Part shown: one piece after another, positions 1 through 7,173 of the stretch | Layout: every line of letters begins with the position of its first letter | Numbering within the stretch: the first letter of the stretch is position 1 | Assembly: GCA_001179505.1 (NCBI GenBank) | Contig: CDMY01000656.1 | Location: 62,001-126,000 of the forward strand | DNA from: Vitrella brassicaformis CCMP3155 | Taxonomy: Eukaryota; Protista; Chromerida | Direction: 5' to 3' | Length of the DNA stretch: 64,000 nt | The notes under the pieces: generated by a model | Databases searched by the model: none | Told to the model about the DNA's origin: nothing | What the model saw: the letters and a program-made list of their open reading frames with translations, nothing else | Program-made: the position numbers and the translations under genes

Positions 1-452
1 GTACCGTCAGCAGCGACATCCATCTGTATGACATGGGGCATCGCGTCAGCGTCAGTATAGCGCCCCACCACCTCTCTCACATGCGTCAAGAGCGCCGCCT
101 CACGCCGATGATGGTCCTTGCTGGCCCACCCCGGCACCCCTCGCCCCCACGTCACCAGAGGCATGCGCATCTTGAGGCCGAGTTCGGTGGACAGATCGGC
201 CATTCGGTCGCAGAGGGAGAAGTCGAAGACGCCTTGCTGTGGCTGCAGGACGCCCATTGTGCCTGACAGAGAGACAGACGGATGCTTTGGTGTGGGGGTG
301 ATTGTCCGTCTGTGTGTGCACATTGTGCAGATGTCGGCAGCAGGTTCGATTCTTCTGCCTGTGTCTGCAGGTAGGTGGGGTCTGTGAGCTGCCGTGGTGA
401 GGTGACGGCAAAGCCCACATACATCCTCCGCCCATCGGCCAATGCGCGAACG
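1..452 (-). pseudogene. 5'-truncated duplicate of the GH10-like module (copy of ~2664-3115); runs off the left window edge
   Basis: Near-identical to 2664-3115 at offset 2663, including the intron. ORFs 33..266 vs 2696..2929 and 118..387 vs 2781..3050 differ at only a few residues. The splice acceptor (GTGCAG|GCGGCG) of the full copy is missing; similarity ends in a (CA)n tract. Confidence 0.8.
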
Positions 453-1068
453 CACACACACACACACACACACAGTAGATGCACGTTTGCGCGCCGCACA
501 GACACACACACTGGCATGCAGACTGGGGGCGGCACTGAGTGAGAGAAAGACGCCTACAGAACAAAGGTGCAGGCGAGAAGCTGAGTGCGTGTGTTCCAAG
601 ATAATGTGACAATGGGCTATCAAGCCTTACCAAGCAGAGGGAATGAGGTTGTGTGTGCGGGTCATGAGGGGAATCCCAAGTTGGTCAAAAGGTATCCCAC
701 CTCGGGAATGACGAAGTAAAGACCATATAGGTCGGTCTTCATCGCAATCGCATCTCCATCACCAGCATACAAAAAGTCTGCTACAGGCCCTTGACGTCCT
801 TGCCGATTCCTTGAGGTCCTTCATCCTTTTCCTGAGCCGACAAGCGCACAGACAGAGAGAGATGTCAGCTGGAGGGCCTTGTGGCTGCTCCTCGCTTCAT
901 GTGTGGCCTCTCTATGTGTGAGCCTCTCTGGTGCCCTTTGTGTTTTGGGAAAGGCATGTGCCGTTAGCGACCCCTAGCACCACTCAAGCTCGCAACTGTA
1001 AACGCTCTCTGATTTTGAGGGCTTTTTCCCATCGCAGGGGGTCGGAGCGGCGGCTGAGGTGCTCATCT

Positions 1069-1354: not shown

Positions 1355-1823
1355 CGTCCTTCAAATTAGGGTGACTGCGTTGATGACACTAGCTACCCAC
1401 AAAAACGTGTGGCACACACGCACACACACATGGACTAAAGACACACACGCGCACACACGAAGCGGATGAAGGACAAAACGCCCTAACCTGCAAGAGAGCG
1501 GGTGAATGCAGGCCGATCTATAGAGAGAGAGGGAGAGAGGGGATGTGTCCCTCCATGTCTCGATGGATGGATGGATGGATAAAGGGAGCACGCGCACGCA
1601 TGCACAATGGGACACACGAAGGCACGACACGAAGCGATATCGATATCTACAGACGACGGTGTGAAGACCAATCAATTGCCCGATGCAGCGGTGGTAGGTA
1701 CCAAAAGGACTACAGCTACACACACGGCGATGTTTTCTCTACACACACACATACACGAAGGAAGCGCACGCGCGACAACGAAGGAGACAACACCAATGCG
1801 ACGCATGAGCCCCACACACACTA

Positions 1824-3122
1824 TCAGGCTCCCATGAGGGCCTTCCGCACACCGACATACGATGAGCCACTCAGCAGCAGAGACCGGTGGCTGCGCTGGC
1901 CCTTGTCGAGCCATGACACTGACACGCCTCCCATCGTCACTGTGGTGCAGTTGGGCTCCTCAAGACAGATGCGCGTCAGCAGCATGGACACCTCCACCTG
2001 ATCGATGACACACACACAGGGGGATGAGGGAAGGTTTGCTGCGATGCGCGACTGGCGTGCCCAGGTGGTACCTACCTGCTCTTGGAAGGCCAGCTCGTTC
2101 CTGCCATGCAGCTGCCGGCATGTGGCCGACTTGCCGCATGAGACCTCCAGCTGCGTCATGTGGACCTCCATGCCTAACCGTCCGATGCGACGGACCTGGC
2201 GTGACACACCTGATGGATCACACACACACAGATGGCGAGAGAAGGTCTCTGTGCGGCGGTTGAGAGCTTACTGTCGAAGTCTGTGCCGTGAAGGGCGACG
2301 CGCATCTGCATGGCCACTCCATTGACCGGCGCGCCTTTCTCCTTCAGGAACCGCAGATACTGATACATCGCCTCTCCCTTCCCCTGCACACACACACACA
2401 CACACGGAAAGGTGTATGTTCCTCTCATTCCCCTCACCCCTTTGCTTGATTCGATGTGGTGGTCGCTGATCATGAGCCGTATGGGCGCGTTGCCGGCGGC
2501 CTCACGCGCCGCCTTGAAGGCCCTCTCCACCCACCCTGACGGGCCGTGGAGAACCGGGGAATTCTGTGGGTCCTTCTGCACATTGGAGAGCACTGCACAC
2601 ACACAAGGAGGGAGGGGAGTCCACATACACATATACTTCGTTGATTCCGGCATTCACTCGGGCGTACCGTCAGCAGCGACATCCATCTGTATGACATGGG
2701 GCATCGCGTCAGCGTCAGCATAGCGCCCCACCACCTCTCTCACATGCGTCAAGAGCGCCGCCTCACGCCGATGATGGTCCTTGCTGGCCCACCCCAGCAC
2801 GCCTCGCCCCCACGTCACCAGAGGCATGCGCATCTTGAGGCTGAGTTCGGTGGACAGATCGGCCATTCGGTCGCAGAGGGAGAAGTCGAAGACGCCTTGC
2901 TGTGGCTGCAGGACGCCCATTGTGCCTGACAGAGAGACAGACGGATGCTTTGGTGTGGGGGCAATTGTCCGTCTGTGTGTGCACATTGTGCAGATGTCGG
3001 CAGCAGGTTCGATTCTTCTGCCAGTGTCTGCACATAGGTGGGGTCTGTGAGCTGCCGTGGTGAGGTGACGGCAAAGCCCACATACATCCTCCGCCCACCG
3101 GCCAATGCGCGAACGCCGCCTG
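1824..3122 (-). other. GH10 (endo-xylanase-fold) module, probably catalytically inactive
   Basis: The GH10 motif order is conserved. WDVVNE reads MDVAAD (2669-2686), ITELD reads MTQLE (Q at 2151-2153), and QSH reads QMR. Confidence 0.75.
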
Positions 3123-6100
3123 CACACACACACACACACACACCATAACACGCAATTCGCGCAGACATCCGCAGGCGCCCCCTTTCAGCCACTCACCATC
3201 GAGCGACGCACTTGCAGCACTGAAATGCGCCTTGAGATCCGGCGTGATGGTCTCAACCTGATGGACCTGCTGACTCCGAGCACTCAGCCGACCCCTTGTG
3301 TGTGTCGCCATCACTGTCACTATGTCCGACTCGAGAAGAAAGGGCTCCACCAGCGCGCATGGCGCGTGTCGCGTGTCGGCACACGACGGGCCCACCGACC
3401 GAATGTGCCACGGGCAGCACAGCTCCCTCATCTCCTCATCCCCACTCTCACAGGCCTCCCCCTCAGCGTCATCACGCGCGCCACATATGCTCGCGGAGCA
3501 GGCCGACCACTCCTTGTTGAACACGCCGTTGGCGATCTCGGTGCAGTAGGCTTGGGGGTCGACTGTGAAGCGGCAGGGCAGCTCTGACGCTGAGCCGTCC
3601 GGTGCACACGCGGGCAGCATCTCATAGTCGGGGCAGCAGAGTTCCGGGGTGGTGGGTGAGCATTGGTCGGCGTCCGCGCCGCAGTTGTCGCACGACTTGG
3701 GGCAGCAAACTTGGTGCGTCACGTCGAACTTCCCACCCAGCTGCTGCGCACACACGGCTGCAGGGAACAGGGGAAGTGGAAAGAGAGAGCGACATGTGTG
3801 TCAGTGGAATCGACTCTCGACTTACCGGCGTTGGATATCTCTTCCATCGGTGTGGCAGCGATGCTCGCAGTTGTGACGGGCCTGTTCCTGCCACTCGCCC
3901 GGTGGGTCTCCATCATGGTGACGCTCTCGTCATCCACAGCACACGGGGCAACCTCTAACTTGGAGCAGTAGAGATCACTTCCAGCCGCCCTGATCTCCTT
4001 GCTGCAGCACTTGTCCGGACGGCTGTCTGCGCGCAGCGAGCAGCCCTCCCCGCCGCACTCTTCGCATTCGATGGGGCAGCAGACCTCTCTCGCTTCGTTG
4101 AATACCCCGCCTATGTAGTCCTCGCACACGCGTCGCTTCGTCCATCGGTCCTTGATGGACATATCGGGCCGCTCCGTCAACACACACGGAAGCGCGGGGG
4201 TCCCATTTCCGTTGCTGCCGCTGCTGCATGCGGCCATTGCGGCCATTGCGGTTGTTGTCTCGTTCGTAGAGCAGTCGATGCTGCCGAGCGCGCCTCTCTT
4301 GCAGCAGACACCGGTGTCACGGTCGTAGCTGCCGTCCAGATGCCGCCTGCATAGCACCTCCCTCTCATAGACAGGTGCCACATCCGCCTTGACAGAGAAG
4401 AAGGTAGCTGCGGTGACCAGACATGGGGGCTCGTGGTCTATGTCGCAGGAAGAGGCGTTGCTGGCGTGTATGCCCGTGGAACAGCACACTGCTGTTCCGC
4501 CTGGCAGGCTCCCGCAGTCCATGCCGCCACACTGGCCACAGTCAGAGGGGCAGCACGCGTCCTCGCCATCCGACAAACCCCCAAGCTTGTGCTGACAGAT
4601 CTCCCTGCAGACAGAGAGAGGGAGACAATTGCACAGGGGGCACATTAGGCACGTGCACTGACTTCACGTACCAGGCACTCTCCGCAAAGGCGTCTTTGGA
4701 CGCCTCGTCCATCCGGCACGGCACAGCAGACGCATTGCTGCAGTCGGTCCCATGGGCGCGCAGCATGTCCGGGCAGCACTCGCTGTCGGTCTCGCATGTC
4801 TGTCTGTCGCACGACGCGCATTTCGCCGAACAGCAGACGGTGGCTCGGTCGTCGGCGATGCCACCAAGTCGGGTGCAGAGGGTGGTCCGATCGGCGGCCG
4901 AGAATGCGTCACTTCGGAGAGATATGTTCGCTGCACGAATGCACACACAGGAGATAACAAGATTTCCATACTCCATCCACAGGTGTTTGTATGTCTTATT
5001 CTGTACCCACCTGGCTTGGTGATGTCGTCAACAGGAGGAGGCTCGCCCCCATTCCCATCGACAAGCGCGGCTCTCACAAGATCCACATTGCGCATGGTGC
5101 ACGGCGGGGCCCCCCTGTCCTCGCACCTCTCGGCATACTTCTCGATCTCCTCCACACAGCACTCGGGCTCCATCCCCGTGCATCTCTCGCCGGTCGCGCA
5201 TTCGCTGCAGATTTCTGACGGACAGCATGCTCTGGTCGCATTGAGGCCGCCCTGTCCGAAGGTGCCGCCCAGTGCGGTGCAGGCTCGGTTGAAAGTGACG
5301 TTGAGTGTGGGCATGAGGGCTTCGGTGATGCGGCAGGGAGGGGTGTGCTCGCCGTCACATGCCGGTTTTAAAATCACTTCGTAGTCACAGCACTCGTCCC
5401 TGCCGCCCTCTCTGCACGCGTCAGGCAGCCATGCAAGCGTGTTTGTGCGTCCTGTGGGTGTGGAGGCTTTCGTGCTTGGTTACGTGTCTTCGCAGAATGC
5501 CCCTCCGCACTTGTCGCCACATCGGCCTGCAGGGCAGCAGTTGCCCGACAGCCCGTAGATGCCACCCACCTTGTGCTCGCACAGCCACTTCCTCTCCTCG
5601 AATGTCATGCCGGGGTGACGCTCTTGCTGCACTCAGACAGACAGACAGACGATGGACGGATGGACGTGTCCATACTGGTGTGTGTACCTTTTGGAACTGT
5701 GAGTTGAGTGAGAGAGGGTCGTTAGGGTGGTTGGGCTCGACGAAACCTGGAATGGTCGTCACGAGCGACTCGTTCTGACGCGTGGCCATCCAGACACACA
5801 GACGCACAGATGGTGCCCATCCATTCAGGTCATGCTGGCCAGCTCACCCACCGACCATAATTGATACGGCATCGATCCTGATCGGTGGGGACATTTTCGC
5901 CTCGTCAAGCGAACCAACATGATCGGCGAACGACACCTGCAGGGAGACAGACAGACAGACGGACGGACGGACAAGGACACACATGCTCGCACACCAACAG
6001 CCGCCCACCGACCTACTGGACCTACCGTGAACGCTCCATTGTTCCGCTCTGCGTTAAACCAAGAGGCGAGACGAGGATGGTACATCCGCATGTGCTTGAC

Positions 6101-6955
6101 GGGCACCGCTGCGTTCATGAAACTCACCTGCACACACACACACACACACACGCATCCTCGCATCCTCATGTGCGCCGAGTGTCCACTCGTTCTCACCACA
6201 AAGTAATAGTTGGTTGCTCGTGTGGGGAACGATGCGTAGATTGAGACGTTGTCATTGGCCAGACCGGGGCAGGGCACAAAGCGCCAGCTGGCCTCCTGCG
6301 TTGCGTGAGCCCTGGTGCTGCTCTTGACTGCCGCAAAGGGCATGACCGTGAGAAGGTTCTCTGGGCATCCCTCACACCTGCACACATACCCACACGGAAG
6401 GAGGCCGCATGTGGCTGCTGGCTGGATGGATGGATGGTGACATGATCGGCTGGTTACCCATCGACGACGAGCATGTGGTGGAGTGCTTCCGCATCCAAGG
6501 GACCCTCTGTGGTGGGGTAGATCTGCAGGAGCACACCACGGACAACCCTGGCTGTGTCCTCCCTCTGTTTGATTGATGTGCGTACCTCCATGCAGGTGCC
6601 GCAGGCCAGGCCGTCTTCGAAGTGTGTCTGCGGTACCCTCACCACACCGCTCACACTGGGAACTGGAGGCAGCTTGTGGATCGAGCACCCTCCCTGCCCG
6701 ATGACAACCGCCACCAACAACAATGGCAGCACCACACACCAACGCTAAGGTGTTGTCATTGCCTTCTGTGCAGTGTGCCTTGTGTACCGTATGTGATTCG
6801 TTCCAGAATGCCTCGTTGTCGAGATTTGCTGTGTGCCATGGCTTGTAGAAGTTGAAGGGCGCAGCAGCACGAGGGAGGCTCAGCAACGCTGCTGCAGCTG
6901 TGAGGGCAAGGATGGCGAGATAGTCCCTGGCAGTGTGGCCATCACCGTCTTGCAT
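1824..6955 (-). CDS. Secreted modular protein: signal/anchor + expansin-like (DPBB + CBM63) + 8 Cys-rich repeats + GH10-like TIM barrel (multi-exon)
   Basis: N-terminal hydrophobic stretch YLAILALTAAAALLSLPRAAA. Expansin motifs GGCS...FEDGLACGTCME...VVDGCEGC...SWRFVPCP...NYYFVV...VSFMNAAVPV. Eight C-x-GG...CC...C..CG...CC...PC modules. GH10 motifs RALAGGRRMYVGFAV, QPQQGVFDF, VERAFKAAREA, LKEKGAPVNGVAMQ, LGMEVHMTQLEV, ICLEEPNCTTVTMGG. GT-AG junctions checked by eye for several exons. Confidence 0.8.
3300..5630 (-). repeat. Eight tandem Cys-rich protein modules (~60-70 aa each)
   Basis: Modules begin CEHKVGG, CTALGG, CTRLGG, CQHKLGG, CRRHLDG, CEDYIGG, CAQQLGG and CTEIANG. Each is followed, with some degeneracy, by (V/A)CC, a C-x2-CG-like motif, CC and a terminal PC. 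Confidence 0.85.
5960..6830 (-). other. Expansin-like module (DPBB + CBM63) within the 1824-6955 gene
   Basis: Spliced peptide WHTANLDNEAFWNESHT|GGCSIHKLPPVPSVSGVVRVPQTHFEDGLACGTCME|IYP...MLVVDG|CEGCPENLLTVMPFA...SWRFVPCP...ATNYYFVV|VSFMNAAVPVKHMRMY...WFNAERNNGAF follows the motif order of expansin/EXLX proteins. Confidence 0.75.
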
Positions 6956-7173
6956 CGTCTGCACGGCAACCTGTCTTCGTCTTTATCTTGAAATAGTAGG
7001 CCAGCCCTTGTTGCTATTCCGGCCGATACTAGCTCGCACTTCCTGACACGAGCGAAGGATGGAGGGCGAAGAAGAGGTAGATGCGCACCTTGCTAGGCGC
7101 CGCACACGGCATCGAGCCTGTTGAAGCTACAAGACAGCACTCCGATCCATAGCTTTCGCGACTTGGTCGCACG

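What the first reader, a model, noticed from the sequence alone, without database searches (positions are those of the whole stretch)
1824..6955. Expansin-Cys-repeat-GH10 fusion: a modular wall-glycan protein in an apparent apicomplexan relative
Seen: one spliced minus-strand gene joins a signal/anchor, a full expansin-like module (DPBB+CBM63), eight Cys-rich spacer modules and a GH10 xylanase-fold barrel. Known: microbial expansins (BsEXLX1 type) are largely HGT-acquired, and described fusions are mainly to GH5 cellulases or CBMs. I do not recall an expansin-GH10 fusion, or one in an alveolate. Inference: both enzyme-like ends look inactivated (next two findings), so this may be a two-headed, rod-spaced glycan binder or cross-linker for the cell or cyst wall, or for attachment to algal or coral substrate, rather than a hydrolase.
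Basis: partly seen in the sequence, partly recalled or inferred. Interest (0 to 1): 0.85.

Follow-up and report, generated by a model that had tools for sequence, protein, structure and literature searches.

The report
Expansin-cysteine-repeat-dead-xylanase wall protein of Vitrella
The alga Vitrella, a photosynthetic relative of malaria parasites, makes one 1300-residue secreted protein joining an expansin-like cellulose-binding head, eight copies of an undescribed cysteine-rich module and a xylanase-fold domain without its catalytic residues. It is a non-enzymatic sister copy of an intact expansin-xylanase gene in the same genome.

Summary
A minus-strand gene runs from ATG 6955 to TGA 1824, with 18 exons, 17 GT..AG introns of 54-94 nt and an open frame of 1300 codons. 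Spliced transcript contigs from three runs show 13 introns directly, two more follow from contig arithmetic, and two are predicted. Two overlapping contigs tie the expansin exons to the GH10 exons and the stop.

- **Expansin:** a profile of the window's pieces plus Vitrella paralog CEM23853.1 hits one solved chain, an EXLX1 expansin (E 1.3e-6). The window's exon 2 alone ranks maize beta-expansin first (E 0.063, weak).
- **Cysteine modules:** eight 10-cysteine modules of about 63 residues. They have no Pfam family and no fold match, and also occur in brown algae.
- **GH10:** real by Pfam, exon by exon. The acid/base Glu is Asp and the nucleophile Glu is Gln. By my reading, six more active-site residues are changed.

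The paralog (expansin, four PAN, two Cys modules, intact GH10) shares intron positions in both end modules, so the fusion predates the duplication. This scan already reported that paralog on other DNA of this genome (s1-231054). A wall-binding, non-hydrolytic role is inferred, not shown.

The parts
1824..6955 (-). Complete CDS: 18 exons, 3903 nt, 1300 aa
   Evidence: GT..AG introns, open frame, spliced transcript contigs with no mismatch
6860..6955 (-). N-terminal signal peptide or signal anchor (MQDGDGHTARDYLAILALTAAAALLSLPRAAAP)
   Evidence: Read from the sequence: charged n-region, about 15-residue hydrophobic core, small-residue c-region. No predictor was run.
5688..6859 (-). Expansin-like module, exons 1 (end) to 7. 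D1 (DPBB) is about aa 40-150 and D2 (CBM63-like) about aa 150-250.
   Evidence: Profile A2 hits EXLX1 7wvr_A at E 1.3e-6 as the only PDB hit. Exon 2 hits maize EXPB1 2hcz at E 0.063 as top hit. BLASTP to the paralog's N-terminus gives 2e-4 and 0.002. The paralog hits NF041144 at 6.6e-8.
6347..6349 (-). Thr in CPENLLTVMPF, at or next to the position of the conserved expansin D1 Asp (HLDLF in 7wvr)
   Evidence: alignment read against the exon 4 sequence. The register is uncertain by one residue (Thr or Leu).
3351..5587 (-). Eight tandem 10-Cys modules: M1 5486-5587 plus 5327-5410, split by an intron; M2 5093-5287; M3 4710-4883; M4 4415-4603; M5 4178-4357; M6 3935-4132; M7 3567-3755; M8 3351-3551. 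M5 and M8 are degenerate.
   Evidence: Local HMM built from 139 instances hits all eight. 222 representative proteins reach E<1e-3. No Pfam family. AF2 pLDDT 89.
3198..3350 (-). Linker of about 50 residues between the last Cys module and the GH10 domain
   Evidence: no profile hit and no cysteines
1827..3119 (-). GH10-fold domain, exons 13-18, about aa 980-1300
   Evidence: Pfam PF00331 on three exon pieces, E 1.2e-4, 5.4e-7 and 3.8e-3. PDB GH10 hits for exon 14. BLASTP to the paralog's GH10 gives 7e-13, 3e-4 and 2e-5.
2669..2674 (-). Ala-Asp in place of the Asn-Glu of the GH10 acid/base motif (aa 1108-1109)
   Evidence: MDVAAD aligned with FDVANE; that motif aligns with WDVANE of 1xyz.
2151..2153 (-). 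Gln in place of the GH10 nucleophile Glu (aa 1218)
   Evidence: MTQLEV aligned with FTEVDV. FTEIDI in 1xyz. No RNA difference at this place in X1, X2 or X7.
1..474 (-). Start of the next tandem unit (period 2663 bp): a 96.7% copy of 2664-3142 (GH10 exons 13-14). It lacks the expansin and Cys exons and has lost the exon 13 acceptor site.

Best explanation
This is an expressed Vitrella brassicaformis gene for a secreted modular cell-wall protein. It has, in order, a signal peptide, an expansin-like D1+D2 module, eight disulfide-rich 10-Cys modules and a GH10-fold domain.

It is a paralog of the intact expansin-PAN-Cys-GH10 xylanase CEM23853.1, and both descend from one ancestral, intron-bearing fused gene. 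After the duplication this copy has no PAN domains and eight Cys modules instead of two. Its GH10 lost the acid/base residue (Glu to Asp, with the preceding Asn to Ala), the nucleophile (Glu to Gln) and most -1/-2 subsite residues. Its expansin D1 probably lost the conserved Asp as well.

It most likely works without hydrolysis. The expansin D2, whose aromatic NYYF/SWF positions are kept, would dock it on the cellulose of the alga's own wall. The Cys-module array would act as a rigid stalk. The dead barrel would serve as a binding or structural end.

Shown: the gene model, expression, domain identities and substitutions. Inferred: secretion, wall location and binding.
For: - Gene model and expression.
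- Expansin identity: the profile containing the window's own pieces has EXLX1 7wvr_A as its only PDB hit, E 1.3e-6, covering D1 and the first half of D2. Window exon 2 alone ranks maize EXPB1 first. The paralog's N-terminus hits NF041144 expansin_EXLX1 at 6.6e-8 and EXPB1_D1 at 0.0026, and its nearest Atlas clusters by language-model features are expansin/DPBB families.
- GH10. Catalytic motifs compared with an intact relative and with 1xyz.
- Paralogy: the same module order and shared or near-shared intron positions, within one codon. These lie after CGTCME/CLEV, after VVDx, after YYFV/YWLA, after GAFT(V), after DVAAD/DVANE and after QEQ/YIQ.
- Genome identity: tetranucleotide correlation of 0.92 with a Vitrella locus, and earlier notes.
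- Context: the Chromera wall is mainly cellulose, with linkages read as heteroxylans and xyloglucans (PMC9293442).
Against: - No localisation, binding or activity data exist.
- Expansin scores are below the curated family cut-offs (32 bits against 100 for NF041144), and the window's exons alone give only weak hits.
- AF2 of the paralog's expansin module failed (pLDDT 39), so there is no fold-level confirmation.
- The GH10 cleft has lost the residues that usually bind xylose, so the barrel may bind nothing.
- Two of the eight Cys modules are degenerate, and the neighbouring tandem copy differs by 7 non-synonymous against 2 synonymous changes. This is compatible with relaxed constraint in this gene family.
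Confidence: 0.6

Rival explanations
1. It is a decaying duplicate. The gene is transcribed but is drifting toward pseudogene status, and the substitutions in both end modules are loss of function rather than a change of function.
For: Catalytic and subsite residues are lost. Modules M5 and M8 are degenerate. The tandem copy at 1-474 has lost a splice acceptor and shows 7 non-synonymous against 2 synonymous differences. No protein model for this gene was found in the databases searched.
Against: A 1300-codon frame is intact across 18 exons, with all 17 splice sites canonical. Spliced transcripts occur in three runs of two studies. All ten cysteines are kept in six of the eight modules, and the aromatic D2 positions are retained.
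Confidence: 0.17
2. It is a regulator or decoy for the active paralog. The dead GH10-expansin protein would occupy the same wall sites as, or bind partners or inhibitors of, the intact xylanase CEM23853.1, and so tune wall remodelling.
For: The two proteins share ancestry and end modules. Pseudoenzyme paralogs often regulate their active relatives (general knowledge).
Against: There is no co-expression or interaction data. The PAN domains of the active paralog are absent here. The cleft residues are changed, so occupancy of the same sites is doubtful.
Confidence: 0.1
3. It is an adhesin for foreign substrate such as coral, algal or biofilm glycans, rather than a protein of the alga's own wall.
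For: It has a secretory N-terminus and many putative binding modules. Vitrella is coral-associated (PMC9293442).
Against: Nothing in the sequence points to a foreign ligand. Expansins of walled eukaryotes usually act on the organism's own wall (10.1101/637728).
Confidence: 0.1
4. The GH10 domain keeps some catalytic activity, on a new substrate or by a new mechanism, using Asp1109 and other residues.
For: Asp can act as a general acid, and the barrel is otherwise recognisable.
Against: The nucleophile is Gln, and by my reading His, Asn, Glu, Lys and Trp of the active site are also replaced. Nucleophile Glu-to-Gln mutants of retaining glycosidases are essentially inactive (established knowledge).
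Confidence: 0.03

Closest known systems
Vitrella brassicaformis CEM23853.1 / UniProt A0A0G4G5L3 (P0047), annotated 'endo-1,4-beta-xylanase'
   Same: Same genome. Same order of modules: signal, expansin-like module, Cys modules, GH10. Shared intron positions in both end modules. Same 10-Cys module.
   Different: That protein has four PAN domains, only two Cys modules and an intact GH10 (FDVANE, FTEVDV; 1xyz E 1.6e-48). GH10 identity to the window is only about 33%. The window copy has no PAN, eight Cys modules, and Asp/Gln at the catalytic positions.
Microbial expansins (EXLX1 type; PDB 7wvr, BsEXLX1) and plant beta-expansin EXPB1 (2hcz)
   Same: Two-domain D1 (DPBB) plus D2 layout. Motifs GGCS...F.DG.ACGTC.EV, VVD.C.GC and W.FVPCP. 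Aromatic residues at the start of D2.
   Different: It is very divergent and below the curated profile cut-offs. The conserved D1 Asp seems replaced by Thr or Leu. The module sits inside a 1300-residue protein rather than standing alone at about 200-250 residues.
Known expansin fusions: GH5-expansin (Xanthomonadaceae), GH5-CBM2-expansin (Clavibacter CelA), CBM1-expansin (swollenins), CBM2 and CBM32 fusions (10.1101/637728)
   Same: An expansin module is joined in one chain to another carbohydrate-active module.
   Different: The partner here is GH10, which is not on that list, and it is catalytically dead. The host is an alveolate. The spacer is a Cys-module array. The gene is intron-rich, so it is not a recent bacterial transfer.
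Glycosidase-fold pseudoenzymes such as chitinase-like lectins (GH18 fold with the catalytic Glu replaced); an analogy from general knowledge
   Same: A glycoside-hydrolase barrel is kept after loss of the catalytic acid.
   Different: Chi-lectins keep their sugar-binding cleft. Here most cleft residues have changed too, so ligand binding is unproven. I found no GH10 example in the literature searched.

Membership tests
Expansin (D1 DPBB + D2 CBM63) | Significant profile or sequence match covering both domains in the order D1 then D2 | tested here: met
   Profile A2 (paralog plus window pieces) against PDB: the only hit is EXLX1 7wvr_A, E 1.3e-6, chain residues 16-152 of 199. The paralog against NF041144: E 6.6e-8, two stretches. 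Window exon 2 against EXPB1 2hcz: E 0.063, top hit.
Expansin (D1 DPBB + D2 CBM63) | Score above the curated family thresholds (NF041144 100 bits; Pfam DPBB_1 28.8; EXPB1_D1 27) | tested here: not met
   The paralog scores 32.1, 13.4 and 18.6 bits. The window's exon pieces give no hit.
Expansin (D1 DPBB + D2 CBM63) | Conserved D1 Asp of the HFD/LDL motif (BsEXLX1 D82), needed for wall loosening | tested here: not met
   The window has CPENLLTVMPF where 7wvr has CGTNHLDLFEDAF and the paralog has ADGDLRVDA. The register is uncertain by one residue, but no Asp is available in either register.
Expansin (D1 DPBB + D2 CBM63) | DPBB plus beta-sandwich fold | tested here: inconclusive
   AF2 of the paralog's module with a 3-row alignment gave pLDDT 39, so no fold search was meaningful. 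The window's own module is split over 7 exons, and the joined step was left out.
Expansin (D1 DPBB + D2 CBM63) | Non-hydrolytic loosening of, or binding to, cellulose | not testable with these tools
   Needs protein and wall assays.
Glycoside hydrolase family 10 | Match to the GH10 profile along the barrel | tested here: met
   PF00331 on three exon pieces covers profile positions 47-125, 179-220 and 206-291, with E 1.2e-4, 5.4e-7 and 3.8e-3. One piece is above the 22.1-bit cut-off. Solved GH10 chains are hit by exon 14.
Glycoside hydrolase family 10 | Acid/base Glu in the (W/F)DV(V/A)NE motif | tested here: not met
   MDVAAD.
Glycoside hydrolase family 10 | Nucleophile Glu in the TE(L/I/V)D motif | tested here: not met
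   MTQLEV. Transcript contigs show the same letters.
10-Cys module (no named family) | C-x(4,5)-GG-x(~8)-CC-x3-C-x2-CGG-x-C-x(6-10)-CC-x(8-12)-C-x(6-8)-PC pattern, about 63 aa | tested here: met
   Alignment A3 (125 instances): 7 Cys invariant, and 3 more Cys, a Gly and a Pro at 90% or more. The HMM finds eight copies in the window. No Pfam model.

The most novel reading that the evidence does not exclude
This would be the first natural case of a GH10 barrel converted into a non-catalytic wall-binding or structural domain. It is tethered through an array of a structurally new 10-Cys module to a binding-only expansin, forming a cellulose-to-matrix cross-linker in the wall of an alveolate. An active sister gene in the same genome gives a direct before-and-after comparison.
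Probability: 0.3. Interest if true: 0.7.

Novelty: new variant of a known kind. Interest (0 to 1): 0.55.

Why it matters
Expansins, GH10 xylanases and Cys-rich spacers are each known, but their union in one chain is absent from the published survey of expansin fusions, and so far it is seen only in Vitrella. This genome holds both an intact and a dead version descended from one fused ancestor. That makes a natural experiment in how a wall-degrading enzyme becomes a non-enzymatic wall protein. It also offers an entry point to the almost unstudied wall biology of chromerids, the free-living relatives of apicomplexan parasites. The 10-Cys module is widespread in brown algae and other protists, folds confidently, matches no solved structure, and has no family entry.

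Tried and rejected
- Pfam on raw stop-free ORF pieces of the expansin region gave nothing. NCBIfam on the window pieces gave nothing meaningful.
- MAFFT alignment of single exons to the paralog misaligned them (A1). Two longer in-frame pieces that read through a short intron aligned acceptably, apart from the tail of one piece (A2).
- AF2 of the paralog's expansin module with three rows failed (pLDDT 39), so no fold search was done on it.
- The word-indexed search with the paralog's N-terminus found no relatives, neither as part of long proteins nor as a stand-alone piece. phmmer of that N-terminus against PDB found nothing.
- The Atlas feature search on the window's exon 4-5 piece gave no usable hit. 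phmmer of that piece against PDB gave only a chance hit.
- The window's own protein was not found in the representative library or the 5.8-billion-protein set, so no stored full-length reference exists.
- Fold searches of the Cys module found nothing convincing: Foldseek PDB no match, VIA wide no Z of 2 or more, Atlas TM 0.42 or below.
- Mis-assembly or a chimeric model is rejected. A genomic contig of X3 covers 3068-6121 without a difference, and the RNA contigs match this copy exactly while the tandem copy differs by 3.3%.
- RNA editing that restores the Glu codons is rejected, because the transcript contigs show no differences.
- Plastid targeting (Phe after the signal peptide) was considered and dropped, because the DPBB domain starts at once with no transit-peptide-like stretch.
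Full report
**Gene model.** The region is GC-rich eukaryotic DNA, 57-62% GC in 500-nt windows. Three-frame reading of the minus strand and a splice-site check give 18 exons from ATG 6955 to TGA 1826-1824. The 17 introns are all GT..AG and 54-94 nt long. The CDS is 3903 nt (1300 codons) with no internal stop, and an in-frame TAA lies nine codons upstream of the ATG.

**Expression and continuity.** Contigs of four public runs were laid on 1700-7100. X3 is genomic: one contig covers 3068-6121 with no difference. X1, X2 and X7 lack the introns, with CT..AC joints on the plus strand, so they derive from spliced RNA. Thirteen introns are seen directly. Two more (2384-2437, 3120-3196) follow from the arithmetic of contig coordinates. 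Two (5937-6025, 6128-6196) lie in masked repeats and are predicted only. X7 contig 19 carries every joint from exon 11 up to exon 1. X1 contig 1 carries the joints from exon 11 down to exon 18, with about 380 nt of 3' UTR. The two overlap over 470 nt of exon 11. Two independent studies therefore tie the expansin, Cys and GH10 parts into one message. X7 retains intron 2384-2437.

**Handling of the spliced product.** Every query was an exon, or an in-frame stop-free piece, given by reference, or a database protein.

**GH10 end.** Pfam PF00331 hits three exon pieces, with E 1.2e-4, 5.4e-7 and 3.8e-3, and exon 14 hits many solved GH10 chains. A full HMMER scan with exon 11 brought in P0047, which local BLAST showed also matches the GH10 exons. 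P0047 is Vitrella brassicaformis CEM23853.1 / A0A0G4G5L3, 1097 aa. It has four PAN domains and a canonical GH10: Pfam E 8e-71, and 1xyz at E 1.6e-48 with FDVANE and FTEVDV aligned to WDVANE and FTEIDI.

Pairwise alignments place the window's MDVAAD on FDVANE (E 7e-13) and MTQLEV on FTEVDV (E 2e-5). The acid/base Glu is therefore Asp, with the preceding Asn now Ala, and the nucleophile Glu is Gln. I read the same alignments against the usual GH10 active-site set (my knowledge of Cex numbering) and find further replacements:
- AENECK becomes TSAQCT;
- RFH becomes RMP;
- GFQTH becomes AMQMR;
- WGFTD becomes MGGVS.

This is a dead barrel whose sugar-holding residues are largely gone. The transcript contigs show no differences there, so editing does not restore the residues.

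**Expansin end.** The window's exons alone give no Pfam hit. P0047's N-terminus is visibly colinear with them:
- GMCS...ACGTCLEV against GGCS...ACGTCMEV;
- ALVVDLCHEC against MLVVDGCEGC;
- IRWHAIPCP against SWRFVPCP;
- AYWLALQVSN against NYYFVVSFMN;
- LGAFTV against NGAFTV.

BLASTP gives E 0.002 and 2e-4 for the two in-frame pieces. P0047:30-270 hits NCBIfam expansin_EXLX1 at E 6.6e-8, Pfam EXPB1_D1 at 0.0026 and DPBB_1 at 0.095. Its nearest Atlas clusters by language-model features are expansin/DPBB families, with scores of 0.85-0.92.

A profile of P0047 plus the two window pieces (A2) searched against all PDB sequences returns one hit only: EXLX1 7wvr_A, E 1.3e-6, across chain residues 16-152. 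The window's exon 2-3 piece alone ranks maize beta-expansin EXPB1 first, at E 0.063, on the GACG...F.DG.GCGSCYEVRC motif.

I conclude that the module is a divergent expansin, with D1 and D2 in the usual order, below the curated thresholds. Where 7wvr has HLDLF, the window has LLTV, so the D1 Asp needed for loosening (my knowledge of BsEXLX1 D82) seems absent. The aromatic residues at the start of D2 (NYYF, SWF) are kept. Fold confirmation failed, with AF2 pLDDT 39.

**Cys modules.** Exons 8-12 hold eight copies of a module of about 63 residues with ten cysteines. M1 is split by an intron, and M5 and M8 have lost some cysteines. The exon 11 search found 222 representative proteins at E<1e-3, none above 44% identity.
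- Named sources include the brown algae Ascophyllum, Choristocarpus and Nemacystus, an MMETSP transcriptome and metagenomes.
- Partner domains include LRR, polysaccharide deacetylase, ShK, malectin, TIG, F5/8C and PAN+GH10.
- Pfam has no model for the module.
- With a 125-row alignment (A3), AF2 gives pLDDT 89.
- Foldseek on PDB, VIA-align on 48,161 chains and the Atlas shape search find no convincing match. Such searches are weak for small disulfide-rich domains.

**Origin.** The genome is Vitrella: the tetranucleotide correlation with the P0047 locus is 0.92, against 0.94 between the two halves of the window, and earlier notes of this scan say the same. I mapped P0047 on its locus (28 exons) and compared it with the window's model. 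Intron positions coincide, or fall within one codon, at four sites in the expansin module and three in the GH10. The fusion therefore existed, with introns, before the two genes diverged. It is not a recent bacterial insert, and the two fusions are not independent. No other protein with this N-terminal module was found, within the word-sharing limits of that tool. The window's own product is not in the databases searched.

**Neighbourhood.** Window 1-474 repeats 2664-3142 at 96.7% identity, starting 23 nt upstream of exon 13. The GH10 half and its 3' region form a tandem unit of 2663 bp. The next copy lacks the expansin and Cys exons, has a 5-nt deletion that removes the exon 13 acceptor, and differs by 7 non-synonymous and 2 synonymous changes. 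The variants seen in X3 match that copy.

**Literature.** The survey of microbial expansins lists Vitrella as the only alveolate with an expansin and names fusions to CBM1, CBM2, GH5 and CBM32 only (10.1101/637728). The wall of the sister chromerid Chromera is mainly cellulose, with linkages read as xyloglucan and heteroxylan (PMC9293442). I found no report of a GH10 pseudoenzyme.

**Verdict.** The cross-linker function is a reasonable but untested inference, weakened by the loss of cleft residues. The architecture is new to the literature but not unique to this gene. Its active paralog is in public databases under a xylanase label, and this scan already reported it (s1-231054).

Noticed in passing
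window 1-474 vs 2664-3142: The GH10 half of the gene is a tandem unit with a period of 2663 bp. The next copy is 96.7% identical, starts inside intron 12, has a 5-nt deletion that removes the exon 13 acceptor, and shows 7 non-synonymous against 2 synonymous changes. It is probably a decaying partial duplicate.
   Followed up: partly
window 3351-5587; proteins P0001-P0150: The 10-Cys module of about 63 residues has no Pfam family. It folds with pLDDT 89 and has no PDB or Atlas fold match. It is common in brown algae and in unnamed protist or metagenome proteins, joined to LRR, polysaccharide deacetylase, malectin, TIG, F5/8C and ShK domains. It is a candidate new extracellular domain family.
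   Followed up: partly
L001 10001-14960 (Vitrella CDMY01000571.1): The paralog's gene has 28 exons, and 26 of its 27 exon boundaries fall between codons in my exact-match mapping. A second, GH10-only gene (410 aa) lies head-to-head next to it at L001 7605-9952.
   Followed up: no
window 2384-2437: This 54-nt intron is spliced out in the X1 contig but retained in the X7 contig. Its length is a multiple of three; whether it would read through in frame was not examined.
   Followed up: no
window 5630-5650 and 6416-6439: Very deep contig pile-ups and many loose ends occur at two short intronic low-complexity stretches (GTCT/CCAT-type repeats). The motif is dispersed throughout the genome and is the cause of the spurious 5650-to-6419 joint.
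   Followed up: no
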